DNA of 64,000 bases from Octopus sinensis (Eukaryota): the NCBI RefSeq assembly GCF_006345805.1, contig NC_042997.1, positions 107,942,001-108,006,000 on the forward strand, read 5' to 3'. The position numbers were made by a program, and so were the translations under genes. This document shows positions 422 through 56,946 of this stretch, piece after piece. The notes under the pieces were generated by a model. That model had not been told where the DNA came from. It searched no databases and was given only the letters and a program-made list of their open reading frames with translations. Position 1 is the stretch's first letter. Each line of letters begins with the position of its first letter.

Positions 422-1021
422 GCGTAAGTGTGTGTATTGGTCTGGGGTTCCTCCTGAGCAAATGTCTTCATGAGCAATCGTGGGCGCTCTCGAACACTAT
501 CCCCTCTGAAAGAGAAGGAAAACTCTTATCATGAAAAATCGTGTTCCACGCTGAAATGGTCTGCTAGAAACGACGCCGTACTGTTTTGCGTATAGACCAG
601 TAAAATCGGCCAAAATTAATATTCACAATTTAGTCTACAATTGATTACGACATCTGGCACATCCCACATCATGGACCTATATAGGCAACGTCGATTTGAT
701 GGAGGGACTGAGCTAACCTACAGGTCAAACATTATCATTATAAACAAGTCACCTGTGTAGTTGTTCAGCAAACCGGAGGATCAATACGATCTTGCGTTTT
801 TGATTAATGAACCCACAACTGTCATTTAAGACAGGAGGATCGAACACATGCGCGCGCACGCACGCATACACACACACGCACACGCACACTCACACTCACA
901 CATTGTTTTAACTAGCAAGATATCTGACGTGTAATCGTACTGTGTTGTACTTTCCGAAGGCATTTTGCGAATAAGATATCACGCACTCCTTGATTTTCGC
1001 TTATTATTATCATTATTATTT

Positions 1022-1228
1022 AGGCGACGAGTTGCAGAATCATTAGCATGTTAGACAGAATACTCAGCGGTATTTTGCCCCTCATTACGTTCTGAGTTCA
1101 AATTCCGCTGAGACCGACTTTGCCTTTCATCCTTTCGTAGTCGATAAATTAAGTACCAGTTGCGTACTGAGGTCGATATGGCCCCCTCCCACAAAATTTC
1201 AGTCCTTGTGTCTATAGCAGAAAGGATT
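1022..1228 (+). mobile_element. tRNA-derived SINE, family S2, tail type ending in (ATT/TAA)n
   Basis: GGCGACGAGTTGCAGAATC head, GAGTTCAAATTCC B-box, core CTTTGCCTTTCATCCTTTCG..GTCGATAAATTAAGTACCAG. Homologous to 15164, 25365 and 56645. Confidence 0.8.
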
Positions 1229-1284
1229 ATAATAATAATAATAATAATAATAATCATAATAATAATAATAATATAATAATAATA

Positions 1285-14982: not shown

Positions 14983-15081
14983 TTGTGGCTGCAGTGGCTG
15001 CTGCATATACTAAGTCATTTAGCTCAGTGATATTGCTATTTGTTTCAGTGGCTATTAGTTCCGTGACGGCTAGGTTTATGC

Positions 15082-15085
<4 letters not shown>
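14983..15085 (-). mobile_element. About 100-bp internal fragment of family D
   Basis: Near-identical to about 10510-10613; followed by (TTA)n. Confidence 0.8.
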
Positions 15086-15128
<43 letters not shown>

Positions 15129-15163
15129 GTTGTTGTTGTTGCTGTTGTTGTTGTTATTAATGA

Positions 15164-15296
15164 TATTCCGCCGAAATCAACTTTGACCTTCAGCCTTTCG
15201 GTGTCGATTAAATAAGTACCAGGTACGCACTGGGGTCGGTGTGATCGACTTAACCTCTTCCCCCAAGCTTGCCTCGTAGCAAAAAGTTGAAATCAT
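15164..15296 (+). mobile_element. Partial SINE S2
   Basis: ATTCCGCCGAAATCAACTTTG...GTCGATTAAATAAGTACCAG..GCACTGGGGTCG core. Confidence 0.7.
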
Positions 15297-15319
15297 TATT
15301 ATTATCATTGTTATTATCA

Positions 15320-15600
15320 TATGAAAACTTTCATCTTATTTTGCTGGGTATGATGGGATGTGTAAGCTGTCCAAAGCCAGCAGAGTAAGGTGACACTTGT
15401 TTATTGGTCAGGCTTCAAGAACTCTGCGAACTATTCTTCCAGTTCCAAGTAATATTGATTTTTGTAGGTGTTTTACCTGCACCAATCTTTTTCAGCCATG
15501 ATGGTAGTTGAGTGCTTATACTTCCAAATGCACCAATTACTACTTTTGGTATCACGTCTACTCTCTTCATTGACCACAACCTTCGTATTTCCAACTTAAA
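15320..15600 (-). mobile_element. Old R4-like 3' end fragment
   Basis: Decayed reading RLWSMKRVDVIPK-VIGAFGSIS...LQKSILLGTGRIVRRVLE. Confidence 0.6.
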
Positions 15601-22759: not shown

Positions 22760-25364
22760 GCACACACAATGACTCTACATTGCTTTTCAAGTTACGATTA
22801 ATCATTTTGATAGTTTGTAGGAAATGCCAGGCCTTATAGGGTTTTTTATATGACAGAACTGAGGAAAATGGAAAATGTCTCCGGAGTAGATCAAGCTTGC
22901 GCAAGAGTTTGTGCTTTCTGGTCAGCTCCTCGAATGTACAACTGCAAATTCATTCAGTTTATAAAACTGAAATTATATTTCGAACATAGAAATGAGATCA
23001 ACCCTTGTTGACAAACACTTCTTATTCATCATTTAGTCATCGTTGTAAAAGTCAGAAATTGGATGCAAACTTAAAAAAAACTGCCTCCGCTCTGTTTATG
23101 TTAGCAGACATATACATCACCCGAGAACCTTTCCCCAAACTCGTTATTTTTTGATAACCTTTAGTTCTCCAACGAGTAGTTTTACATGAACACAAAGCAC
23201 CGTTTGTTTTTAACCGTGAGTTGGCGTATTACTAACAACATTAATTTATTCTTCTCTTACACAAGTCCTTGAATTTCTTTTATTTTCATCCAGGTCAATC
23301 CTGGGGCTATCTGCTTCGATGGCCAAATATGTCAGCTACAAACGTGTACAGAGTCTCTCACAGAGAAACCTAGCTGGTTTCTATATCATCTGATTTGAAG
23401 GTCGATATGTTTAGTCTTTCAGAGCTGGTTTTAGAAAAAGCTTTTCAAACACTAATGGCTTAAGATTCTCCACCTTCAACTTTTTTGCTGGTGGCTTGAC
23501 CGAAACGGTTCTCTTGCTTATAAAATTCAATTCCGTTAGCAATGACCCCGCGGTCAGCAGTCAGCGTCTCACAAAGATCCTGTTATCGGCACATCATTGT
23601 TCTGTTAATGACGTAAGCGTAAATATATATTAAGTACCTGCTGGCAGTTCCTGTTTCAGGACATTTGATCTTTCCACATACTTGCTATAGTTGTGCTGAC
23701 TAACGGTATACAATAACAACATCACCAACAATCCTTAGTCATCAATATTCACTCGCCGTTAATTACTGGTATGCAATATTATGTTGTTACATTCTCAACC
23801 AATGCAACAACAATTCTCCAAGGACTAGTCTTTACAATTAAATGATATTCTGTTAGATATAAAATAGTTGAAGCGTTGCAACAAACTCACAACTCATGCC
23901 TTCAAATCCATTTTAGATGTTTTCGTTGTACGTCCGGTTAAATTATCATTCTCCATTGTTTCACTACAACTGGCTAAAGCAGAATTCACTTCATCTGGCT
24001 AAACAGATGTAACGTGAGTTACACCAAATATTTATCCTAATGACTGAAAGGGAGAATGGCAGAGTACTTGACCATCTTCTGCATGCCTAGTAGCAACAAG
24101 ATGTTTTCAGATAAGAGATCTGCTCCGAAAGCTTGCAGAAGAATGAACTTTAATAAAATCTGCCACCCAAGAACAGGGACAATTCTTCCGACGAGATCCT
24201 ACCAAGGCTCTCTAACAAATCTCGTTTAAGCCAGAAGCTATTATAGAAGACGCTTGACCATTCTGGGTATATTACAAATGGAACAGAATCTTTATATAAT
24301 CATTTCATAGGACATGAAATAAATCATGAATTAGCGACTTGATGTCTGGATTTCGACTTTCGAATTTCGCAGACGATATAGAAATTCTTTCTGTTTCATT
24401 CTCATTAAAACTATTCCCATTGAATAAATTTATTTCTTGTCTGACCTTCCTTTTTGATGTTTTATTTTGATATTTATATAACATTTGAAAAAATCATTTC
24501 ATTTGAAATATGGGCGCATACGAGAAAGGGTTATAATGTTGAAGTAGAAATTAAAATGATCTCGAAGCAAATGAGAATAGCCTCATAGCAAATTTATATA
24601 ATCACGAACAAAATTAAAGGATGAGACACGTGGGATGGAAGAGTCGTTGAAGAGGTCACAGGTGTGTGACGAAAGGATTCCAGTCATTGAACATAAGATA
24701 AAATAATAATAATAATAAACGAGTGAAGAACGAACGTATAGTGCGAGTGTTTATTTGGCAAGAAAAAAAAGAGAAAAAAAACGACCATCCTGAAATTAAA
24801 CAATAATTGCTTCAACACACGAGTTTACATCAGGAATCCTGCAAAACAAATTCATAAACGTAAAAATTAAAAAGTAATTACTTAAAACAGAGTAAGATTT
24901 TGAATGGTTTTATCTTAAATGTGACGATATATCATCGTCGTTTAACCGAGGTCTCCAATACAGCGTTTAATTATGAATGACAAAAATCAGTCGCAAAGCT
25001 GAGAGACTACAAAATCTCGTATTTCACAAAGTTTCACACAGAGAAGCAAGCGGGGAGCCTTACAAGAAATCTACGCTTAAAATTCCTTTTTTGTGTACAA
25101 TTTGTCGCTGAAAGAGAAGATTGAGAATCCGTTATTACAGTACTTGGTGTAGTAATGAAGACAACGGCATATATTTGGTAATCAGGAGTTGTACAACATA
25201 ATGGCTGAGTGCCTGCGATATGTCTTACATGCTATTGAGAAAGACCTAAATATTATTTTGCCTAGCCCTGAATATCATTCTGTGAGAAGTAAAAGCGAAG
25301 TTGATATTACATTAAAGAGTAGGGCTGCCAGCTGACAGAATCTTTATCACATCAATAAGGCGGC

Positions 25365-25935
25365 GAGCTGGCAGAATCGTTAACACGCCGGGCGAAATGC
25401 TTAGCGGTATTTCGTCTGCCGTTACGTTCTGAGTTCAAATTCCGCCGAGGTCGACTTTGCCTTTCATCCTTTCGGGGTCGATTAAATAAGTACCAGTTAC
25501 GCACTGGGGTCGATATAATCGACTTAATCCGTTTGTCTGTCCTTGTTTGTCCTCTCTGTGTTTAGCCCCTTGTGGGTAGTAAAGAAATAGGTATTTCGTC
25601 TGCCGTTACGTTCTGAATTCAAATTCCGCCGAGGTCGACTTTGCCTGTCATCCTTTCGCGGTCGATAAATTAAGTACCAGTTACGCACTGGGGTCGATGT
25701 AATCAACTTAATCCGTGTGTCTGTCCTTGTTTGTCCCCTCTGTGTTTAGCCCCTTGTAGGCAATAAAGAAATAAGAATATCATAAATTTCGTCGCGGTCG
25801 ACTTCGCCTTTCATTCTTTCGGGGTTGATGAAATAAGGACCAGTTGAGCAGTGGGGTCGATATGATCGACTTGCCCCACCCCAAAACCGAAATTGTTGGC
25901 CTTTGGCCTTGTGCTTAAAATTATAACCAATATTA
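25365..25935 (+). mobile_element. Three tandem SINE S2 units (full 25365-25589; 5'-truncated 25590-25775; third 25785-25935 with the alternative tail)
   Basis: The core GTCGACTTTGCC...GCACTGGGGTCGAT occurs three times. Units 1 and 2 end TGTCTGTCCTTGTTTGTCC...TAAAGAAAT. Confidence 0.85.
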
Positions 25936-42534: not shown

Positions 42535-43769
42535 CATTATTATTATTATTGTTATTATTATTATTATTATTATTATTCCAGCGATTAACTTGATGTGAAA
42601 GTCTTCAATTGATTTGTTCCAGTTTCTTTGTAGGTCAACGGTGCTATTACTTGTTGAAGTCAATAAGGTATTGATTGACTGACTGAAACGTCACTGGTTC
42701 GATTGTGTCCCAGGTGCTCCATTGTGTCCATACCTAAGATACTTAAATCTGAACATTTTCATTTGCTGAGATGGTAGGACTGTCAGTTGCAAGCAGTTGC
42801 AAGCATTGCAATAGTGACGAGCTTAGGTCCAAAACTTCCCGGTAAAGCAAATAAATACTGAATGATATTCATTGGAGACGCAAAGCGTTATTTTCGGTGG
42901 AAACAGTAAATTACATTAATTCAGCCCCGTGTCTGGGATTATTTTATCAACTCCCAGAAAAATGAAAGGTGAAGTCAACAGCAGCGTGATTTGAAGTCAG
43001 AACGAAAGGGCTTATAACTAAATACCATCAATAATATTAATGCCTAAAATTGTGAAAAAGCCACAGAATTTGGGGAAGAATGAAAAATAGCTGACGGTTG
43101 AAATGGGCCCCGGGGTTTTGGTTTGGTGCTCTTGAGAGGTTGAATTGTAAAGTCGTCCACACAGGGATTTGAACTCAGAGTGTTAAATAGTTGTAACTTT
43201 AGTATTTAAGCCAACGATTCTCTGGTTCAGTTGTGTTGGCACAGAGACAGAGATCTGGGCCCTTTTTTTTCTAATATGAAGCTGTTGACTACATCCATCC
43301 TTCCAAATTTGTGACTTTAAAGCAAATAATCTTTGCTGGGATAACGGCGAAATCAACTCAGTACTTCTCATTCTCACTGAGCAATATGGAGGCACGCCTG
43401 GATCAGGCAAAACACCTTGTGAAGGTGAATGGACGAACATAAGTCGCTATCCTAACCAAAGTGATTTTGTTGATGCCATAAACCTCTAGTGTAGCCTTCC
43501 GTACCATACAAGCGGCATCCTGGCTTTCTGCTGCATCACATGCACCATTGGGTTCCGGCTAAAGCCCGACGTCTAAAAGCAGCAACAGACGTCCAAGTAG
43601 AAAGAGCCTTGAAAGGCAGCTAGAGAGCGTGGACGGTCCTTTCATGAGCGAAGACCACGCGCTGAAGCACTCCATAGCTCCCAAGCACAACAGGGAGCTC
43701 CCCTCAACCCTATATAATTACAGAGAAAGGCATTTGGTGGTTGCTGACCTATGTTGCTTTGAAAGGCTT

Positions 43770-45075
43770 ATTCGCGATACTCTGGTAGGTGAGGCACAGA
43801 CATGTTCCATACCAAACAGATCCATCCACGACAACCTCAACCTCATTTGATATATCTTAGAGAGAGTAGGTGAGCTCTGATAAATTCAGATCTGTAGAAG
43901 GCTTTCCATATGATCTGCCATCAATACTTGACGGCTGAAATGAAGGCAGCTGGTTTTGGACTCGTGTTTGGAGGCAGGATCGCTACCATGTAGAGCGAAT
44001 GGCCAGCAGTCGGAACCGTTCAGTATTATGCGTTCGGTATGTACCCATTCAGTAAGTACTGACCCTAAGGTCACTACAGTAGCAGTTGGAGAACAAGGGT
44101 GCGGAAGATTCGTGTTTGCATATGCGGACGACATCACCGTTACAGTGTCGGACACGAACGCATCGAGGTGATCGATGAGGAACTACGAGGAACTGCGAGA
44201 ATAGGATCGGAGCGAAAATTAACTCAAAGCAGTCAATGAACCTGCAGTTGGGCAGTTGGAAAGGCAAGTCCATGCCATCTAAAAGCGTCGTAGGGTGACG
44301 AAGTGATTAAATTGCGCGGGATTTGGTTTGCTTCGCACTTCCAGGTGGGCAAAAACTTGGATAAGGTGACGAGCAGATTGGTTTGTTTCACTCAAAACTA
44401 GACTGAAATTGAACTACTTATGAAGGGCCGAGCGGAGGTGATGAACACCTACTCCGCATTCAGCTTCTATTACTGCCTTGTCGCGCTTCATGGTTGATCA
44501 GAATGGAAAGCTTGCTCTTTCGCTTTTTGTGGATAGGATGCATTCTGCTGGTCGGACGGTCCATTTGTTGCTCACATCCACTGCCTGGTCGATTGGGCAT
44601 GCCGTGGATGATGATCTACCGACACGTGTCGAGGCTACTGCATTTTCTACATTTCCTTGATGGTGATCAGGTGTTGTTGCTGCTTGTTGGAAGCATTTTT
44701 CCACAGCTCGTCTTTTTGTCAGTGATGCAGTTCTGGATCAAACGTAGACCGAGGCAGGGCACTTGCACCTTGAGAGCCGTTAGGCACTCAAAGCCCTATA
44801 TCAATCGGGCGATGTTTCACCAGGACGTTCTGTAGAAGGTTATTGGTGGCTAAGAGCGACGACGTTCTAGGAGAAACTTTGGATACTCTCTTTTTACTCT
44901 TTTACTTATTTCAGTCATTTTGACTGTGGCCATGCTGGAGCACCGCCTTTAGTCGAGCAAATCGACCCCAGGACTTATTCTATCGGTCTCTTTTGCCAAA
45001 CCGCTAAGTTACGGGGACGTAAACACACCAGCATCGGTTGTTAAGCGATGTTGGAGGGGGGGACAAATACAAGCA

Positions 45076-45115
<40 letters not shown>

Positions 45116-45660
45116 CACATATACGACGGGATTCTTTCTGTTTCCGTCTACCAAATCCACTCAAGGTTTTGGTTGGCCCGAGGCTAAAGTAGAAGACACT
45201 TGCCCAAGGTGCCACGCAGTGGGACTGAACCCGGAACCATGTGGTTGGTGAGCAAGCTACTTACCACACAGCCACTCCTACGCCTATGATAATCGTTGAT
45301 GATAATCAACTGGCTGGTCTTTTCTGGAGGATTTTCGGGCCGGGGCCCCATGAATAATTTTCAGAAAATCTCTAACCATGCAGTACTACCGGAATGTGGG
45401 AATGGAGCCGTATTGCCGGTTCGGGATAAGCTCAACAGGCATGATAGTGCTGCCAGCCAAGCCTGCACGAGATGCGCGTAATGCAATAAATCTGCTCTGC
45501 ACGCACACGTACATTGCTCGGGAATGATTGAGTTATGGAATTATGTCGAACAGTCGCCATTACGTGTAGGATGGATCTGGCTATCGGCCAATTCCATTGT
45601 AGCGATATTGATATCCTCACTGTTTGAGGGACACAATAAAAATGATCTCGTTTGAGATTA
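43770..45660 (+). mobile_element. Decayed Tx1/L1-like ORF2 fragment interrupted by a SINE
   Basis: LVGEAQTCSIPNRSIHDNLNLI, FAYADDITV and PVRDKLNRH...CTRC are paralogous to 49220-50640. Confidence 0.75.
44885..45285 (-). mobile_element. SINE S1, full length
   Basis: Complete head to TACTCTTT-type tail. Confidence 0.85.
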
Positions 45661-45702
45661 CAACCACCTTTGGCTAGTTTGACCCTGTTGTGTCCACTGA
45701 TC

Positions 45703-45834
45703 TGATTGGTTGGCATCTAGCACGGTCTGTCTCTCTACCTATTTCGCACCAGAGTGTGAAACCAACCAATCACGGCCTTCGGGTAAAGCCTGCTTCTTGA
45801 TGCCTTTCTTTGAGCCTACCACGGGCTATAAATA
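45703..45834 (+). promoter_or_regulatory. Pol II promoter-like module: two opposed CCAAT boxes and TATAAATA
   Basis: TGATTGGTTGG at 45703-45713 and CCAACCAATCA at 45762-45772 (11-bp inverted pair); TATAAATA at 45827-45834. Confidence 0.45.
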
Positions 45835-46107
45835 GGCTTGCATTTTCCCTATTCTTCGTCTTTCGACTTTAGCCCTCACACACGTCTACGGAGTGCTGCT
45901 TCTTGTTTAACCGTAAGGTTTGTTATTATTATTACTGTTGTTATCACGTTTGTTGGTTTCCCGTAAGGGAAGCATTGTTGTATTGCATTTGGTTAAATAT
46001 TGTAAACCGTAACCCTTCCCCTTTGGGGGAAGGAACTTTTTTGTGTAAAAATTGAACTGTGTCTCTGTTTGGGAAATTGCTGTTTTTACGGAAAAAATTG
46101 TGTTAAA

Positions 46108-47263
46108 ATGTCTTCAATGGAAGGAAATCAAAAAATGAATTTCGCTGCAGCCGTTGGCGGTCGCGAAAAAATAAGCATGAAAATAGAAGAAATCCAAACA
46201 TTCTTCGGAATGATAAGCGAAAGTAATGGCGTATCAAAAATAACACCACCCAACGAACTCAAAAACAAAATCAAAGAGAGAACCATAATATATAAAAGTT
46301 ATAACGCGGAAAGTAAAATATTTGAACACCTGAAAGAGAGCACTATAGAGAGATGTTTTGGTGCGACATTAAAAGAAATAAAATATCTAACAAGAGGTAA
46401 TAAATTCGCCACAATAGAAGCAAGGTTCGAGTCAACGGAACGTGCAAGGGAATATTCGACTCGAACCTTGCAAAGTGGCAAAATTTTGTTGTTGCCCCTA
46501 TATCTGGGGCGAAGGATGTCCCGAATTAAAATTTAAAATATCCCTCCTGAGATGGAGGTTGGGTGGATTTTGGCCACGCTGTTGTATAAGAGAGAAGATG
46601 AAATTAAAATAATTGAAATAACAAGAGACGGATCACAAAATTGACGGGGCCAGATCCTTGAGTTCCTGGCTCAAGCTACCACAAATGACCTTGAATAACT
46701 ATCTGAGGTAATTGTCATGGATGAAATGAAAATATACCCATCAATGTAGAGGGCAGGAAGCCAGGTTGTTTTAAATGTGGAAAAAAGGGCACATAAAAGA
46801 AAAGTGTCCAGAAAACAAAAAAGAAATGAACCAGCCCACCAATACCATCTTCAAGGAAGCCGACCCCCATGAGGGGAATTTTATAACTAAAACAGGCAAA
46901 AATCCTCTCGGAAAAGAGGTGTTACTCGTGGACAAGGAGGAGGCAAAACAAAAAACAACCTCAGCTAAAACCAAAGAGGGCTCACTCCCGGCCACGGAGG
47001 CCGTTACTAGGAGGGCACCTACCCAAGAGAAGGCACTCCCGGCCAAAGAGGCCATCAACGAGGGAGCGACCACCTCTCACCAGCCAACACACGAACATAT
47101 TACGGACAGTGAAGAAGAAACAAGTATGCAGGACACAAACGAAGGGTTTCATACAGTCTCTAGGAAAAGAACCAAGAATGCAGATTCTCCAACAAAGACA
47201 CAGGCCCCGAAAACAAAGGTACCAAAACCGGAAAAAAAAAGAAAAAAGGATAATCATTCATAG
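46108..47263 (+). pseudogene. Tx1-like ORF1 (gag-like, CX2CX4HX4C knuckle), with stops and frameshift
   Basis: MSSMEGNQKMNFAAAV...; CFKCGKKGHIKEKC reconstructed across a frameshift at about 46770-46810. May extend to about 47560. Confidence 0.75.
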
Positions 47264-47632
47264 ATATACCTATAGATATCAACCAGAACAAAGTCTCGGT
47301 GACAGTGGCATACAAAACTAAAAACATCTATCTAGATGGGGTCATTAGACCCCATCGAGATACATCGATATACATTAACAACTATAAAAACAGCCCCATG
47401 ACCATAGCAAAGATTCTTAAAACTTTATTTTTTGACTTAACAAACTACATCCTAACGATATCGGGGCACTAAAAGATTTTTAAAAAGTGTTTGACCCGCC
47501 GGATGAACCCGCCCTGGAAGAAAAGGACGAAAGCCGGGAAATGGTCTCAAATGTTTTGAGAACCATTCCCCTTGAAAGATAAAACAATACAAAGGAATGG
47601 TAAGTGTCTTTCCTTTTCCCGCATGACGTAGG

Positions 47633-50600
47633 ATGACCGTGTTAAGGATCGCATGTTTGAATGTTCGTGGCCTGGGCTCAAAGAGGAAGCAGGCTTGCCT
47701 CCTCGACGACCTCAGGTCACACAGAATAGATGTGATGGTTGCTACAGAGACCAGGTTGGGCAAGCTGCAGGCCTTCTCGACCCTCCTGAACGACAACGAG
47801 AAAATAATTTCTCCTAGCCAGGAGGGAGGGAGTAGAGGGGTGGCAGTTTTGATCCGGAAAAGCCTGGCTCTGCAGACACGTACAATCTTCGTGAACCCGG
47901 AAGGCGAGTCGGTCGTTCTGGATCTAACGTACAGTGGTAAGGCCTTCAGGTTGGTTGGCATCTACGCGCCTGGGAATGCAGGCAAACGGGTTGACTTCTT
48001 TCGACGCCTGGAGAACTTTCTGGTGACATCGAGGACAGTAGTTGTGTTAGGCAACTTTAACGCTATACTGGAGGCATGATTGGATAGCGTTGGTTCGAAA
48101 GATAGAAAGGGTAACTCATGCCTCATCGATCTGATGAAGCGATTCAGGCTGGCAGATCGATATAGACTTGATCATCCGAGCGTTCCAATGGGGACATGAG
48201 CAAAAAACGACGGATCGATAGTGGTAAGTATTAGAGATAAGTCTAGTTTTACTTGTCCACAATTTACCTATGTACCCTACACGGATCACAAATTAGTGAC
48301 GTGTGGGGTGCATATAGATAAGGTACATAGACAGGGATCTGGCCATTGGAAGCTAAACAAGGCACTATTGGATTGTGAGGCATACTGTAGCCAGATTAAG
48401 GTATTAGTTAAGAGGACGCTAACCGGCGCTGTGATTAACAACCGGTGGTGGAGTGCCCTCAAAAGAGCCTTTCGGATTGAGTCAATTAGATTTAGCAAGC
48501 AGTTAAGTCTAGAGCAGACTAGAGTAGAAAGGGATCTAGTTAAGACATTAGAAGAGGCACTGAGATCGGGCCCTGTATCACAAGTGTTGGCGGCGCGAGC
48601 GGCTTTGGACCAACATCTCAATGCCAAGCACGAGGGATGCAGAGTCCGGGCTAGGATACGTGCCATGGGCCGTGAAGGTATCAATGTTACCAGATGGGCT
48701 CGCTCGGAAGAAACCCGACGTGGCATCGACGCTACGATTGGGTCTTTGGCAGATGAGTCCGGACAGGAGATCCAAGGACAAGAGGAGATATGCAAGGCCT
48801 TTCACAAGCACTTTGCCGCGTTGTTCGGGAGGAGCAGGACGTTGGACATGGAGATGCCTTACGGCGTTTTCTGACTGGCGTCCCGCGTCTTTCGGCCCGT
48901 GATGCTGAGCATTGCGAAGGACCAATCACGACTGAGGAGTCAGAGAGGTACTGACCGAGTGCCCCAGGGACAAGTCGCCGGGTCTGGATGGTCCTCCTTA
49001 CGAATTTTATAGTAGCATGCCAGACTTGTTCGAGAACGTACTGGCCAGAGTGTACACGAATTGGCAGCAGAATGGGAGGATTACCAAAGCTGTAAGCCGA
49101 GGAGTGGTGACACTGATCAGGAATGACCCGAGCAAGGGGGATGACGTCAATAATTTTAGGCCCATAACTCTGTTAAACACAGAGTTAAAGATTCTGGCTA
49201 AAGAGTTAGGGTTGTCGTGGGCGACCTGGTAGGAGAAGCACAGACATGTGCAGTCCCTGGAAGGACGATAGAAGACAACCTTCACCTCATTCGCTACACC
49301 ATAGAGCGGGTGGGTAAAATGCATGGCAATGGTGGGGCACTGGTGAATTTGGACCAGTCTAAGGCGTCTGATAGGGTTGACTACAAATATCTGGCGGCAG
49401 TCCTCCGGGTGACCGGATTTGGCCCGACCTTCCGACGCTGGATTAAAGCCATATATGGTAATATCGAATCTGTAGTCCGGGTGAATCGGTTCTTCTCGAG
49501 CCCCTTCGCGATCGAGCGTTCGGTTCGCCAGGGCTGTCCCCTGTCTCCACTACTGTATGTATTGGCGCTTGAGCCACTGCTGCGGAAGCTGAGGGACACG
49601 GGGAAGACCCGCGTGATCTGGGTTATAGAAGAAATGTGTCGGCATATGCGGATGACGTCACCATCACCGTAACTGATGAAGGGCATCAAAGGATACGAGA
49701 CGGTGGCAGGAGCCAAAATTAACCAGGAAAAATCAGTCGGCTTGCAACTCGGCACCTGGCAGGGCAAGGCGATGCCTCCCAACAGTGTTGTTGGGCGCTG
49801 GACGGAGGGCCCGGTTAAAATGCTCGGGGTCTGGTTCGGACCGGATCTCCAGGTGGAGAAAAACTGGAGTGAGGTGACGAGCAAGGTGACATCTATAGCC
49901 CAGAAGTGGTCTGGTAGGAAGTTATCCTTGTTGGGAAGGGCAGAGGTTGCGCAGGTGTTCATGGCATCTGTGATAACCTACCGCCTAACTGTCGTGCCTT
50001 GCCCCGGTTTGTGGCTGACCATGTTGGAGAGGATCCTTTTCCACTTTTTGTGGGGAAGTAGAACTCCACTTGTGAGGCGCTCCATCTGTTGCCAGAAACC
50101 GTTAAAGGGTGGGCTGGGGATGCCCTGGCGAATGATGCGCAAGTATGCACTGAGGCTGAGACATCCCCGGTGCCACCTGGATGGTGAGCAGGTGTGGTCA
50201 TCGCATGCCGAGCTGGTATTCCCAAAGGTAAAGTCACTTGTGGATTTAGGTGCATGGATCACGCGGAGACCCAAGCTGGGGAAATGGCGGGAGGAGTGCA
50301 AACAAGCACTTTCCCTCTTCTCTCGAGTGAGCAATGCTGACAGCAGGGTTACCACAGCGGGTTTTTATAGCGGTTTTGTAGAGCTTAAGTCCGACAACGA
50401 CCTGGGGGAGACTCTAGGCTTCGATAAGGGGCAGTTAGCTAGCCTGTTCGGGAGGACTTTTGGGTCGAGATTTCTGGATAACTACCAGAAATCTTTGACC
50501 TGGCTGTGCTACCGATCGGCTTTACCGGTTCGAGAAAGGTTGTCAAGGCATGGTATTGACACCTCCCCCACGTGTCCAAGGTGCGGGCGTGCTAGTGAAA

Positions 50601-51010
50601 CGGTTACGCACGCCTTCGTACACTGTGAGGAGTTGAGGGAGTTGATGGCCTTTGCCGAACAGCTGATGTCGGATGCAGAATCAGTACGGCTCTCGTCCGA
50701 GTCCATGATAAAGATTGTACCACCTTCCTCTTTCACCAAAGAAAAGAAGGTAGCTTTTCTCTGCATAGTAACCATATTGAAAGATGTGGTATGGAAGACA
50801 TGAGCGGAAGGAATCACAACAGGTCAATTCATCTCCGGACGTGGGCTGGTGAATTACTTCATCGCCCATCTTTCCAGCAAGATCCGTCTGGAGAGGAGGA
50901 GCCTGCCGCAAAGAGTTTTCGGTGAAATATGGATGGAAGTTGTAAGGAAGTTGAGTATGCAAGGTGCTGTGCTTGCACGGTCGGTCCACGTGCAAGGGAA
51001 TGGAAAGTAA
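47633..51010 (+). pseudogene. Tx1-like ORF2 (APE endonuclease, RT, zf-RVT-like C-terminus), disrupted
   Basis: MTVLRIACLNVRGL, ATET, IYAP, GNFN, YTDHK, WKLN (APE); KSPGLDG, NFRPITLLN, VRQGCPLSP, AYADD (RT); CPRCG..ETVTHAFVHC. Confidence 0.9.
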
Positions 51011-52093
51011 GCGCTTAAAAGGAAACCAACCGGCGGGTTAGTCTACTAACCCGGATAGAATAATGTAATACCCATCATATATATTTAATTTAATCACTCG
51101 TTTTCATATCATTTTATTCTCATGTATAAACCCATCCGTTTTTAATTTGTGTAATGGGCGCGTTTGACCCTTATATATTCCTTGTCTGTCCTTGTTTGTC
51201 CCCTCTATGTAAACCTTTATAGGAAAAATAAAGAAATCCTTTCGACTCCAGACCTTTTAAGGTCTAGTCATTGACCACAGAGCTACTCAGCGATGTTCCA
51301 GTTCCAGCGACAGACGACCAGCCTGCCAGCCATGCTCCTGCTTCAGCTACTACGACGCTAATGTACACCCGTAACACCAACTCCTTACGTACGGTCGTAT
51401 AACGCTACACCATCGTGTGGACCAGTCTTCGGTTGGGAAATGCTGGCGTTTTTTTCTCTATTTGCTGGAGAAAGAGATTGTGTAGGGACTGAAAGGACAG
51501 AAGACGAGTGCTCTCCTTTTCGGCATCATCGACTTTTTAGAAATAATTCCGTTTTGAAAAGAGAGATGAAGGTTTGAAAGGGATATGTTGACCCCCCACC
51601 CGCCACCAGTAAATTTGTTAAAAGGTAGATGAATATGGCGTTAGTAGGCTCATTCTAAGCTGGCGTCACTTGGTGAGGAGAGAGGGACTTCCCAAATCAT
51701 CATGGTACCTCAGATGATTTGGGAAACTAAGGATCTGTAGATTTCCTTGGTTACCCTAGGGTTTTGTATAATGTTTTATATATGTAAATCGCCACTGTCC
51801 TTTGTCTTTAAATTGTCCTAACAGTTTTTTTGTGAATAATGCTATTATATTAGAAATATTTATGTCGTTATTTTCAGGACCATCACCGAATAGAAATATG
51901 TTTAAAAATTGTGAATATCACAAGAGAGAGAGAGGGTGGGGAGCGCGCAATCATCGCCTTATGGAGGAATGTATTTGAAATGATAACTTTTTTGCTTGTT
52001 CACCGTTATTATGCGGAATATATTTATAAGTCTAATTTTTTTGCCTACTCACCGTTATTATGGCCACTGATTAAGGAGGAGAGCGAAGAAGCC

Positions 52094-52228
52094 ATGGGAG
52101 CTGGCAACACGAAGGCGGATGATTCGGTCAGTGCGAAATACTTTGACGAGAGCGAAAGGGTTAAAATCACCGAACTTTTTCTGAAGATATCAAAAGACAA
52201 TGAGACATTTACCAGGGAGCAATACAAG
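52094..52228 (+). CDS. MEAK7: First coding exon of a probable MEAK7/TLDC1 (mTOR-associated, TLDc-domain, N-myristoylated) ortholog
   Basis: Kozak gccATGG; MGAGNTKADDSVSAKYFDESERVKITELFLKISKDNETFTREQYK; Gly2 is compatible with myristoylation; donor AAG|GTAATA, phase 0. Similarity to vertebrate MEAK7 is recalled, not searched. Confidence 0.7.
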
Positions 52229-53040
52229 GTAATATTATTCGAATAATCATCACACGGCTGTCTTCATCCTCATCATATGGCAGGTGCTTCGAAGTTCACA
52301 ACATTAATTGTCATCATAAAACATTTATAGGAAATTTAGCCTGAAACAACCGTGGAAAAATACTCTTCTTGATTTTATTCGTTGTTTCCACCTCTACGTA
52401 TTTATCGAAAGGAGGCGGTTTTTTAATGTTATTTCTTCAAAATGTCTTTTTAAAAAAAATAATAGGATGCGCAAAAAAAAAAAAAAGAAACAGCTTGAAG
52501 CAATTCTACTTTAATTCGCATTGTTAATTCGTTTCCTGGTTAATGTTAATTATTAGTTTTATTTTAAAGCCACGACAAAATGCATGTCCTCTAAAATAAA
52601 AACTGACAATGTTAAATTAAGCAGTAACATGTTTGTAAACAAATTGAAATCGAAAAATAACAAACGAAGCAACAGACTGCAACCCAAAGCATGCATTTCT
52701 TGCTTATCTGGCATATGTGTGTGTGTATATATATATAAAATGATAAAGTCATACCGTTTTCTCTAATATTCATGCTATGAGATTGTGGCCCGATGACGAT
52801 CGTGTTGTAGCAAATTGTCCCACTTTCCCCCTACAGTTCTCTGTTTATTTCAACGACGGCCCCACCCTCACCGAATAATAAAATGAACGTTTTCTATTCA
52901 AATCTCCCCCACCTCTCCCGTTTCCTTTATCATTCTGTGCTCTACTCCTTATTTTACCGAACCTAGTTTTTAACACGAGTTCAATACCTAAGTAGGACAT
53001 CTGATAATCATCTCAGAAGTCGATATTAATAGTTTTTTTT

Positions 53041-56618: not shown

Positions 56619-56946
56619 TAAAAAATCCCTGAATTGGAAATATACTTTTTTACTCTAGGCACAAGGCCTGAAATTTTTGGGGAGAGACCAGTCGATTAAG
56701 ATTGACACCAGTATGCAACTGGTACTTAATTTATTGACCTCGAAAGGATGAAAGGCAAAATTGACTTCGGTGGAATTTGAACTCAGAACGTAAAGGCAGA
56801 CAAAATACTGCTGAGCATTTCATCCGGTATGCTAACAATTCTGCCAACTCCCTGAATTGAAAATATTGACCAACAAATCTGTGCAGGATAAATATCTTCC
56901 AATAATTTCCAAATCTGTTGTTGAATTTTATTTTTATCTGTTTCAG

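What the first reader, a model, noticed from the sequence alone, without database searches (positions are those of the whole stretch)
51182..51237. SINE S2 tail is shared with the 3' end of the Tx1/L1-like LINE: candidate SINE-LINE partner pair
Seen: the last ~56 nt of the LINE, inside its candidate TSD, match the tails of the SINE S2 units at 25533-25588 and 25718-25772. TGTCTGTCCTTGTTTGTCCCCTCT is identical over 24 nt (51183-51206 vs 25718-25741), and both end in TAAAGAAAT. Established: many SINEs take the 3' end of their mobilising LINE (stringent recognition), whereas mammalian L1 recognises poly(A) rather than a shared tail. Inference: this cephalopod Tx1/L1-clade element uses stringent 3' recognition and drives that SINE subfamily. 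I do not know whether this pairing is already described.
Basis: partly seen in the sequence, partly recalled or inferred. Interest (0 to 1): 0.72.

Follow-up and report, generated by a model that had tools for sequence, protein, structure and literature searches.

The report
Octopus SINE and LINE share a tail
A decayed L1-like jumping gene in this octopod sequence ends in the same ~56-base tail as a nearby short parasitic repeat (SINE), and related elements from other cephalopods end the same way, so this is an ordinary SINE-LINE partnership, notable because it involves an animal L1-type element that has no poly(A) tail.

Summary
The last 56 nt of the LINE (51182-51237) match the tails of the two S2 SINE units: 24 nt are identical and 47 of 58 aligned columns match, against a maximum of 36 in shuffles.

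The tail belongs to the LINE and is not an adjacent SINE fragment. Every relative whose 3' end I could read ends in a homologous module. These include two copies in Argonauta hians, one of them a 5'-truncated copy holding only the 3'UTR. In A. hians at least 9 SINE copies within 22 kb carry that same tail.

More distant relatives (36-43% protein identity; cuttlefish and metagenome contigs) keep a core motif. It is a C-rich run, a short stem around an invariant CTTGT, an AT-rich stretch and AATAAA. The commoner second SINE tail in the window matches that version.

No copy has poly(A). The stem shows compensatory changes (83% paired against 66% in shuffles).

The LINE has AP-endonuclease, RT and zf-RVT domains, and its closest solved structure is human L1 ORF2p. 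Placement in Tx1 specifically was not tested.

Sequence-specific 3' recognition and trans-mobilisation are inferred, not shown. The window copy is dead (12 in-frame stops).

Verdict: a well-supported new member of a known kind, of moderate interest.

The parts
45869..51237 (+). L1-superfamily LINE copy, decayed. The 5' boundary is uncertain.
   Evidence: ORFs and domains; TSD CTTTCGACT on both sides; an older LINE fragment lies directly upstream.
46108..47263 (+). ORF1 region, broken by stops and a frameshift (46108-46536 and 46775-47263). It holds the remnant of a zinc-knuckle-like WKKGHIKEKC.
   Evidence: no Pfam hit at E <= 0.01.
47633..50803 (+). ORF2 in one frame with 12 in-frame stops: AP endonuclease 47657-48064, RT 49232-49600, zf-RVT 50489-50638.
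   Evidence: closest solved structure of the 60%-identical relative P0002 is human LINE-1 ORF2p, E = 1.5e-21.
50804..51181 (+). Remainder of the ORF2 C-terminus (lost behind a premature stop, to about 51007) and the 3'UTR upstream of the tail.
   Evidence: Alignment with the 3' regions of relatives; tblastn self-match runs to 51007.
51182..51237 (+). The finding: the 56-nt 3'-terminal tail module of the LINE, shared with SINE S2.
51211..51229 (+). Mutated version (AAACCTTTATAGGAAAAAT) of the stem-CTTGT-stem core seen in relatives and SINEs.
   Evidence: Alignments A4 and A5.
45860..45868 (+). Candidate 5' copy of the target-site duplication, CTTTCGACT.
51239..51247 (+). Candidate 3' copy of the target-site duplication, CTTTCGACT.
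25359..25588 (+). SINE S2 unit 1, full length, with A-box-like and B-box-like head; tail-1 at 25533-25588.
25589..25772 (+). SINE S2 unit 2, 5'-truncated, joined head-to-tail to unit 1 and 93.5% identical to it; tail-1 at 25718-25772.
25787..25928 (+). Third, 5'-truncated SINE of the same body type with the other tail (tail-2: ..GGCCTTGTGCTTAAAA..).
56644..56848 (-). SINE copy with tail-2 (..CCCCAAAAATTTCAGGCCTTGTGCCTAGAGTAAAAAAGT), flanked by an 18-bp TSD (56626-56643 and 56849-56866, 1 mismatch).
   Evidence: 21-nt exact match to the 3'UTR of the distant LINE in L017.
1023..1230 (+). SINE copy with tail-2, followed by (AAT)n.
15165..15294 (+). 5'-truncated SINE copy with a degenerate tail-2, flanked by (ATT)n on both sides.

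Best explanation
Positions 51182-51237 are the genuine 3'-terminal module of an L1-superfamily LINE; RepeatMasker would most likely call it L1-Tx1. The module has three parts: a pyrimidine-rich stretch (TGTCTGTCCTTGTTTGTCC..CTCTGTGT), a small stem around an invariant CTTGT, and the terminus AATAAAGAAAT. The S2 SINE subfamily joined its A/B-box-like head and body (tRNA origin not confirmed) to this module, taking it from a close, intact relative of the window LINE. Inferred mechanism: the LINE's ORF2 protein recognises this tail on RNA in a sequence-specific way (the 'stringent' type) rather than through poly(A). It starts target-primed reverse transcription at or just past GAAAU, sometimes on (AUU)n slippage repeats, and so copies both its own RNA and the SINE RNA. 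The window LINE itself is a dead copy. The pairing holds at the level of the LINE group. The commoner tail-2 SINEs in the window carry the version of the same core found in more distant members of the group.
For: SHOWN. (1) The tails are homologous well beyond chance.

(2) The tail is LINE-borne. Relatives at 60-67% protein identity end in the same module: L001 ..GGGCCCTTGTGGCCAATAAAAGAAATC(ATT)n, L002 ..CTCTTGTGGCCAAT, and A. hians L018 ..CAGCCAGGTGGCTAAGAAAGAAAT. A separate 5'-truncated copy in L018 holds only the 3'UTR and ends ..CGGCCCTTGTGGCTAATAAAGAAAT. Each LINE lineage has its own diverged version of the tail.

(3) In 22 kb of A. hians, at least 9 SINE copies end in ..GGCCCTTGTGGCTAATAGAGAAAT; by the sequence upstream of the tail they look like at least two body types.

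(4) Distant relatives (36-43% identity) keep the C-rich run, the stem-CTTGT-stem core, the AT-rich stretch and AATAAA. These are L015, L016, L017, cuttlefish L020 and the Tara contig L021. L017 shares 21 identical nt with the window's tail-2 SINE.

(5) The stem covaries. 83% of cells pair, against 66% in shuffles (0/500) and 13-43% when partners are slid. Three of four pairs show changes on both sides, and the middle pair occurs as CG, GC and AU.

(6) No LINE or SINE copy ends in poly(A).

(7) The TSDs found (9-18 bp) for both the LINE and the SINEs start T-rich: CTTTC.., CTATTTC.., TATTTTC.., ATTTG.., ATATTT...

(8) L1-superfamily affinity rests on Exo_endo_phos, RVT_1 and zf-RVT domains and on the best solved-structure match being human L1 ORF2p at 1.5e-21, against R2 at about 1e-12.

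INFERRED: recognition of the tail by ORF2p, trans-mobilisation of the SINE, and the LINE-to-SINE direction of tail transfer.
Against: There is no functional test. The window holds only two S2 units, and they are adjacent, so 'subfamily' rests on little. The last 28 nt of the window LINE differ from S2 at about 8 positions, and its CTTGT core is mutated to TTTAT. The hairpin has only 4 bp, and predicted folding energies of the tails are no better than shuffles (z from -1.65 to +0.29). I anchored the covariation alignment on the motif after seeing it, and its sequences are related, so few independent events underlie the counts. The LINE's 5' end, and hence its TSD, is uncertain. Only about ten LINE 3' ends could be read, and no genome-wide census was possible. 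The AATAAA in the terminus could serve polyadenylation rather than recognition. ARAGORN and Rfam do not recognise the SINE head as a tRNA.
Confidence: 0.75

Rival explanations
1. The 56-mer is a 5'-truncated S2 SINE that inserted, or was fused by template switching, exactly at the 3' end of this particular LINE copy. On this view it says nothing about the LINE's own tail.
For: The first 28 nt are 100% identical to S2b although the LINE is otherwise heavily decayed. SINEs and LINEs here often lie head-to-tail, so insertion next to an existing tail does occur.
Against: There is no other tail-like motif upstream of 51182 in this copy. Independent relatives in other contigs and genomes end in homologous, lineage-specific versions of the same module, including a 5'-truncated LINE copy. 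The single candidate TSD encloses the LINE plus the tail. The last 28 nt are not S2-like enough for a recent SINE insertion.
Confidence: 0.06
2. The shared tail is real and LINE-derived, but it acts as a transcript 3'-end signal (AATAAA, polyadenylation or termination) or as a stability element. It is not the element recognised by the reverse transcriptase, and the SINE is mobilised in some other way.
For: AATAAA lies 5-8 nt from the end in most LINE copies. Folding energies of the tails are unremarkable.
Against: SINEs presumably transcribed by Pol III keep the module while often losing AATAAA (AATAGAGAAAT, TAGAGTAAAAAAG) and still keep the CTTGT core and the GAAAT-like end. Copies end within a few bases after AATAAA, without poly(A). 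That is not what a used poly(A) signal plus poly(A)-primed reverse transcription would leave. The stem covaries.
Confidence: 0.12
3. The similarity is chance or low-complexity resemblance between pyrimidine-rich, AT-rich sequences.
For: The tail is compositionally biased (T/C-rich, then A-rich).
Against: 0 of 100 dinucleotide-preserving shuffles gave any match. 47/58 columns are identical against a shuffle maximum of 36. The same module recurs at the ends of LINEs and SINEs in other cephalopods.
Confidence: 0.01

Closest known systems
Stringent-type SINE/LINE pairs with a common 3' tail (e.g. eel UnaSINE1/UnaL2, tortoise Pol III SINE/CR1, salmonid SmaI/SalL2), as reviewed by Ohshima 2013 (PMC3747384)
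   Same: An A/B-box-headed SINE (tRNA origin not confirmed by ARAGORN or Rfam) and a LINE in the same genome share tens of nucleotides at the extreme 3' end. A small stem-loop with a conserved loop lies near the end. There is no poly(A), and short tandem repeats ((ATT)n) sometimes follow. SINE subfamilies with one body and swapped tails point to partner switching.
   Different: Those pairs involve L2, CR1, RTE, Rex1, I, R4 or Tad clades. Here the LINE is L1-like (zf-RVT C-terminus, closest to L1 ORF2p). The stem is only 4 bp. Trans-mobilisation has been shown experimentally for UnaL2 but not here.
L1-clade LINEs with conserved 3' ends shared with SINEs in plants and green algae (maize/sorghum ZmSINE2/3 with LINE1-1_ZM; Chlamydomonas SINEX-3_CR with L1-1_CR), Ohshima 2012 (PMC3472496, PMC3747384)
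   Same: A LINE of the L1 group whose 3' end is conserved across family members, forms a hairpin with compensatory changes and a conserved loop, and is shared with SINEs whose heads are tRNA-derived or tRNA-like. This was taken as evidence that L1-group elements can be of the stringent type.
   Different: Those cases are plants and algae, with different sequences and (T)n or (A)n ends. The 58-pair table in PMC3747384 lists no animal L1-group pair and no mollusc pair.
Crocodilian SINEU mobilised by Tx1-Mar LINEs (Kojima 2015, PMC4494074)
   Same: An animal SINE attributed to a Tx1-clade LINE. Shared insertion preference was used as the evidence.
   Different: SINEU elements end in poly(A) and share no 3' terminus with any LINE. 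Here the evidence is a shared specific tail, and there is no poly(A).
Mammalian L1 with Alu/B1 (relaxed, poly(A)-dependent recognition)
   Same: The ORF2 architecture is related, and human L1 ORF2p is the closest solved structure. TSDs fall in the 9-18 bp range.
   Different: There is no poly(A) on any LINE or SINE copy. Instead a specific shared tail is present.

Membership tests
SINE/LINE partner pair with a common 3' tail (stringent type) | The SINE and LINE 3' ends are homologous over tens of nt and end at the same terminus | tested here: met
   47/58 columns identical, shuffle maximum 36; both end in TAAAGAAAT.
SINE/LINE partner pair with a common 3' tail (stringent type) | The tail is an integral, conserved part of the LINE family, present in other copies and relatives | tested here: met
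   Seen in L001, L002 and L018 (two copies). The core is kept in L015-L017, L020 and L021. Only about ten 3' ends were read; there was no genome-wide census.
SINE/LINE partner pair with a common 3' tail (stringent type) | The SINE and the LINE coexist in the same genome | tested here: met
   Both lie in this 64-kb window. In A. hians, the LINE and at least 9 tail-sharing SINE copies lie within 22 kb.
SINE/LINE partner pair with a common 3' tail (stringent type) | The SINE has an internal Pol III promoter head (tRNA-derived A and B boxes) | tested here: inconclusive
   A-box-like TGGCAGAATCG and B-box-like GTTCAAATTCC are visible, but ARAGORN and Rfam find no tRNA.
SINE/LINE partner pair with a common 3' tail (stringent type) | A conserved 3' stem-loop supported by compensatory changes | tested here: met
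   4-bp stem with CTTGT loop; 83% of cells pair against 66% in shuffles (0/500); three pairs show changes on both sides. Energetic support is absent, and the alignment was anchored after the motif was seen.
SINE/LINE partner pair with a common 3' tail (stringent type) | The LINE protein mobilises RNA carrying the tail in trans, and the tail is required in cis | not testable with these tools
   This needs a retrotransposition assay.
L1 superfamily LINE | An N-terminal AP-type endonuclease, then an RT, then a C-terminal Cys/His zinc-binding domain in ORF2 | tested here: met
   Exo_endo_phos 1.1e-9, RVT_1 4e-11, zf-RVT 9.7e-11.
L1 superfamily LINE | The RT is closer to L1 ORF2p than to other LINE RTs | tested here: met
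   For P0002, human L1 ORF2p scores 1.5e-21 and R2 proteins about 1e-12. Only clades with solved structures could be compared.
Tx1 clade (within or beside L1) | RT phylogeny places the element with Xenopus Tx1 and its relatives | not tested
   No reference Tx1 or other clade sequences were at hand. The indirect hint is that L1-Tx1 is the only L1-type class among the recently active LINE classes listed for O. vulgaris (PMC13282606).
Tx1 clade (within or beside L1) | Target-sequence-specific insertion | tested here: inconclusive
   Head-to-tail arrays occur (S2 dimer plus a third SINE; LINE behind LINE in the window, L015 and L018), (ATT)n flanks some copies, and TSDs start T-rich. There are too few copies to define a target.
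Relaxed (mammalian L1-type) poly(A) recognition | LINE and SINE copies end in poly(A) and otherwise share no tail | tested here: not met
   No copy ends in poly(A), and a specific tail is shared.

The most novel reading that the evidence does not exclude
A whole group of cephalopod L1/Tx1-like LINEs, spanning octopods and cuttlefish with members down to about 36% protein identity, uses a conserved 3' module for sequence-specific template recognition. The module is a C-rich run, a CUUGU hairpin and a GAAAU-type terminus. On this reading the group is the engine behind the large SINE expansions of octopus genomes, with different SINE subfamilies (tail-1 and tail-2) each borrowing the tail of a different member. 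That would be the first described animal case of a stringent-type L1-group LINE with SINE partners. It would support the idea that stringent recognition is ancestral in the L1 group and was relaxed independently in mammals and in plants.
Probability: 0.4. Interest if true: 0.65.

Novelty: new member of a known kind. Interest (0 to 1): 0.45.

Why it matters
SINEs make up about 8-12% of octopus genomes, and their expansion has been linked to cephalopod genome evolution. Yet the recent O. vulgaris repeat annotation I read (PMC13282606) leaves 893 of 900 recently active SINE families unclassified, and I found no partner analysis in it or in the other cephalopod papers I checked. Knowing which LINE group supplies the machinery would allow several things: SINE families could be classified by tail, SINE and LINE bursts could be dated together, and active drivers could be predicted. 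More broadly, animal L1-group elements are usually taken as the model for relaxed, poly(A)-based recognition. A clear animal L1-like lineage with a specific shared tail would be a natural test case for how template recognition evolved in this group.

Tried and rejected
(1) DNA pattern scans of public collections for the tail. Genome contigs gave 10 hits, all chance matches in bacterial contigs with no tail downstream. Metagenome contigs and viral contigs gave nothing.

(2) The search for related loci with the ORF2 C-terminal alignment confirmed no relative in metagenome contigs or viral contigs. All extra LINE loci therefore came from protein look-ups.

(3) ARAGORN and Rfam on the SINE head found no tRNA call.

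(4) Thermodynamic support for the tail hairpin was sought and not found. z-scores ranged from -1.65 to +0.29, so energy gives no support.

(5) I joined the two flanks of the LINE to see whether the older upstream LINE continues across the empty site. No protein similarity extends beyond the junction. The region 45550-46250 shows only a 13-nt match (CCCCTTTGGGGGA) to relatives' 3'UTRs. The 5' boundary and the TSD stay uncertain.

(6) I tried to identify the host species from a putative exon (52090-52246). No homologue was found. Closest named relatives are from Argonauta hians and Octopus bimaculoides, plus a more distant one from Acanthosepion pharaonis.

(7) One literature search (tRNA-L1 / cephalopod) returned nothing useful.

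(8) Contigs L003, L014 and L019 stop before the LINE 3' end and gave no information on the tail.

Full report
THE OBSERVATION

The window LINE ends ...CCTTGTCTGTCCTTGTTTGTCCCCTCTATGTAAACCTTTATAGGAAAAATAAAGAAAT at 51237. The two S2 SINE units end ...TTGTCTGTCCTTGTTTGTCCTCTCTGTGTTTAGCCCCTTGTGGGTAGTAAAGAAAT at 25588 and ...TGTCTGTCCTTGTTTGTCCCCTCTGTGTTTAGCCCCTTGTAGGCAATAAAGAAAT at 25772.

The 24-mer occurs three times, twice exactly and once with one mismatch. None appeared in 100 dinucleotide-preserving shuffles. BLAST within the window reports the 28-29 nt cores at E = 1.7e-7 and 2.1e-6. Over the full tails, the LINE matches S2b at 47 of 58 aligned columns and S2a at 45 of 58. Shuffled tails give a mean of 28 and a maximum of 35-36.

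WHAT THE LINE IS

- ORF2 (47633-50803) stays in one reading frame but carries 12 in-frame stops, so this copy is dead.
- Its pieces match Exo_endo_phos (1.1e-9), RVT_1 (4e-11) and zf-RVT (9.7e-11).
- The ORF1 region (46108-47263) is broken and matches no Pfam family. It keeps a zinc-knuckle-like remnant.
- A 60%-identical intact relative (P0002) has human LINE-1 ORF2p as its best solved-structure match (1.5e-21). R2 proteins score about 1e-12.
- Closest named relatives come from Argonauta hians and Octopus bimaculoides, with a more distant one (36% identity to P0002) from Acanthosepion pharaonis.

The element is therefore a cephalopod L1-superfamily LINE. Placement in Tx1 specifically was not tested, because no reference sequences were available. 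Among the recently active LINE classes listed in the O. vulgaris repeat annotation, L1-Tx1 is the only L1-type class (PMC13282606), which fits.

IS THE TAIL PART OF THE LINE?

DNA scans of the public collections found no cephalopod DNA. I therefore reached other copies through protein homologues and the contigs that encode them. Every 3' end I could read in the close family (60-67% protein identity) ends in a homologous module:
- L001...CTGTCCTTGCCTTTTGTATCGTCCTTAATGTTTCCGGGCCCTTGTGGCCAATAAAAGAAATC followed by (ATT)n.
- L002...CTCTGTCCTCTTGTGGCCAAT.
- A. hians locus L018, LINE 3'UTR: ...TTCTGTGTCAGCCAGGTGGCTAAGAAAGAAAT.
- L018, about 130 nt downstream: a separate 5'-truncated copy made only of 3'UTR, ending ...TTCTGTGTCGGCCCTTGTGGCTAATAAAGAAAT.

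Alignment A4 shows the conserved block ...CCCTTGTGG..AATA.AGAAAT across LINEs and SINEs. Each LINE lineage carries its own diverged version of the tail. That is what an integral part evolving with the element looks like. A pasted-in SINE fragment would look different.

S2 tails match the A. hians LINE tail at 44/59 columns and L001 at 40/59 to 40/60; shuffle maxima are 36-37.

The single candidate TSD, CTTTCGACT (45860-45868 and 51239-51247), encloses the LINE and the tail together and arises in about 1% of shuffles. I give this less weight. A degenerate older LINE fragment (43717-45640) lies head-to-tail just upstream. The supposed 5'UTR also holds a 13-nt motif (CCCCTTTGGGGGA, 46018-46030) that occurs in relatives' 3'UTRs. 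The 5' boundary is therefore not secure.

THE PAIRING RECURS IN ANOTHER GENUS

In the 22-kb A. hians locus, at least nine SINE copies end in ...TGTCTGTCCTTCTGTGTTCGGCCCTTGTGGCTAATAGAGAAAT or close variants. Judged by the sequence just upstream of the tail, they look like at least two body types, one of them about 75% identical to the S2 body. They lie next to the LINE with the matching tail. Tail sharing between SINE and LINE is thus conserved between two octopod genera.

The other SINE copies in the window share the S2 head and body but carry a different tail. They lie at 1023-1230, 15165-15294, 25787-25928 and 56644-56848 (minus strand). Their tail reads ...CCCCAAAAATTTCAGGCCTTGTGCCTAGAGTA(A/G)AAAAG.

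This tail-2 shares 21 identical nucleotides with the 3'UTR end of a distant LINE relative (about 40% identity). That is L017...CCCCTCAAAAAATTTCAGGCCTTGTGCCCAC...TTTTAAAGAAATAAAG.

The same architecture closes the 3'UTRs of L015, L016, the cuttlefish LINE L020 and a Tara Oceans contig L021. It consists of a C-rich run, a short stem around CTTGT, an AT-rich stretch and AATAAA. Both SINE tails in the window are therefore versions of one conserved LINE 3' module. SINE subfamilies with one body and different tails look like partner switching within this LINE group.

A CANDIDATE RECOGNITION HAIRPIN

The bases flanking the invariant CTTGT can pair: GGCC/GGCC (L001), GGCC/GGCT (A. hians), AGGC/GCCT (tail-2), GCCC/GGGT (S2a) and TGAC/GTCA (L021).

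I tested this on 24 LINE and SINE tails, including the mutated window LINE and L002.
- 83% of cells form standard pairs, against 66% in column shuffles (0 of 500 reached the observed value) and 13-43% when the 3' partners are slid.
- Three of the four pairs show changes on both sides.
- The middle pair occurs as CG, GC and AU (a first version is).

There are caveats. I chose the anchor after seeing the motif. The sequences are related, so few independent events underlie the counts. The stem has only 4 bp. Predicted energies of the tails are no better than shuffles, although the hairpin appears in five of eight minimum-energy structures. I treat it as a reasonable candidate, not as established.

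MECHANISM

Shown:
- a shared tail that is LINE-borne, conserved across the lineage and co-terminal in LINE and SINE;
- no poly(A) on any LINE or SINE copy; (ATT)n follows the L001 LINE end and (AAT)n or ATT-type repeats follow some SINE copies;
- TSDs of 9-18 bp for the LINE and the SINEs that all begin T-rich: CTTTC, CTATTTC, TATTTTC, ATTTG, ATATTT;
- frequent head-to-tail arrays: the S2 dimer plus a third SINE at 25359-25928; LINE tail, then LINE, in L015; two LINE ends in L018.

Inferred: ORF2p of an intact family member binds the module on RNA. It primes reverse transcription at or just beyond the GAAAU terminus, with microhomology to T-rich targets or slippage on (AUU)n. It thereby copies SINE RNAs carrying the same module. 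This is the stringent model established for UnaL2/UnaSINE1 and proposed for a plant L1 lineage (PMC3747384). It contrasts with poly(A)-based recognition by mammalian L1.

The main rival that survives is that the module serves RNA 3'-end formation (AATAAA) and not RT recognition. Against it, SINEs keep the CTTGT core and the GAAAT-like end while often losing AATAAA, and no copy carries poly(A). The rival that the tail is an adjacent SINE fragment is very unlikely given the relatives.

COMPARISON WITH WHAT IS KNOWN

SINE/LINE tail sharing is a well-known phenomenon. The survey of 58 pairs lists L1-group pairs only in maize/sorghum and Chlamydomonas. It lists none in animals and none in molluscs (PMC3747384).

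Crocodilian SINEU elements are attributed to Tx1-Mar LINEs, but they end in poly(A) and share no 3' terminus with any LINE (PMC4494074).

Papers on mollusc SINEs and cephalopod repeats do not report a partner LINE for octopus SINEs (PMC4758252, PMC4824008, PMC5786205, PMC9115989, PMC13282606).

I could not consult Repbase or Dfam, where such a pairing might already be noted. I therefore rate this as a new member of a known kind. It could fairly be the first animal L1-group example of the stringent type.

VERDICT

Still open are the Tx1 placement, the identity of the exact driver, and the mechanism itself. Interest is moderate (0.45).

Noticed in passing
window 43717-45640 (+): A degenerate fragment of a second, older L1-like LINE, 42-54% identical to the L001/P0002 family. 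It lies head-to-tail directly upstream of the LINE in the finding, and its 3' part could not be traced. It makes the 5' boundary and the TSD of the main LINE uncertain.
   Followed up: partly
window 25359-25928 (+): Three SINE units lie head-to-tail: a full S2, a 5'-truncated S2 starting at position 49 of the unit (93.5% identical, no spacer), and, 14 nt further on, a 5'-truncated unit with the other tail. This suggests insertion next to existing tails, or tandem duplication.
   Followed up: partly
window 1000-1022 and 1231-1300; 15070-15160 and 15295-15320: (ATT)n, (AAT)n or (GTT)n microsatellites flank SINE copies on both sides. The L001 LINE end is followed by at least 28 ATT units. These are either RT slippage tails or a microsatellite target preference.
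   Followed up: no
window 46018-46030; L001 about 1857-1869; L018 about 12110 and 12520: A palindromic C-run/G-run motif (CCCCTTTGGGGGA in the window and L001; CCCCCCTATTGGGGA-type variants in L002, L003 and L018) recurs in the 3'UTRs of LINE relatives. It also occurs in the supposed 5'UTR of the window LINE. It may be a second conserved hairpin, or a trace of tandem LINE arrangement.
   Followed up: partly
window 51029-51056: The window LINE 3'UTR holds an imperfect hairpin, CCGGCGGGTTAG-TCTA-CTAACCCGG, at roughly the position where relatives have the CCCC..GGGG hairpin.
   Followed up: no
L015 212-300 and 6362-6470: The same LINE tail motif (CCCCATTTTTCGGCCTTGTGCCAAAT...) occurs both at the 3' end of a full-length LINE and immediately upstream of its ORF1. 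This is another head-to-tail LINE arrangement.
   Followed up: no
protein P0004: A cephalopod LINE ORF2 fragment is deposited as 'MAG: zinc-binding domain-containing protein [Herbaspirillum sp.]'. This is evidently host-DNA contamination in a bacterial metagenome-assembled genome. Several JGI, ENA and Tara 'metagenome' contigs (L001-L003, L014-L017, L021) are likewise most likely host DNA from cephalopods or other eukaryotes.
   Followed up: no
window 52090-52246 (+): An ORF segment starting MGAGNTKADDSVSAKYFDESERVKITELF... looks like the first coding exon of a host gene, with an N-terminal MG start typical of myristoylated proteins. The word-index protein search found no homologue.
   Followed up: partly
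window 25359-25450: The SINE head has A-box-like (TGGCAGAATCG) and B-box-like (GTTCAAATTCC) motifs about 75 nt apart. Neither ARAGORN nor Rfam calls it a tRNA, so its parent tRNA remains unidentified.
   Followed up: partly
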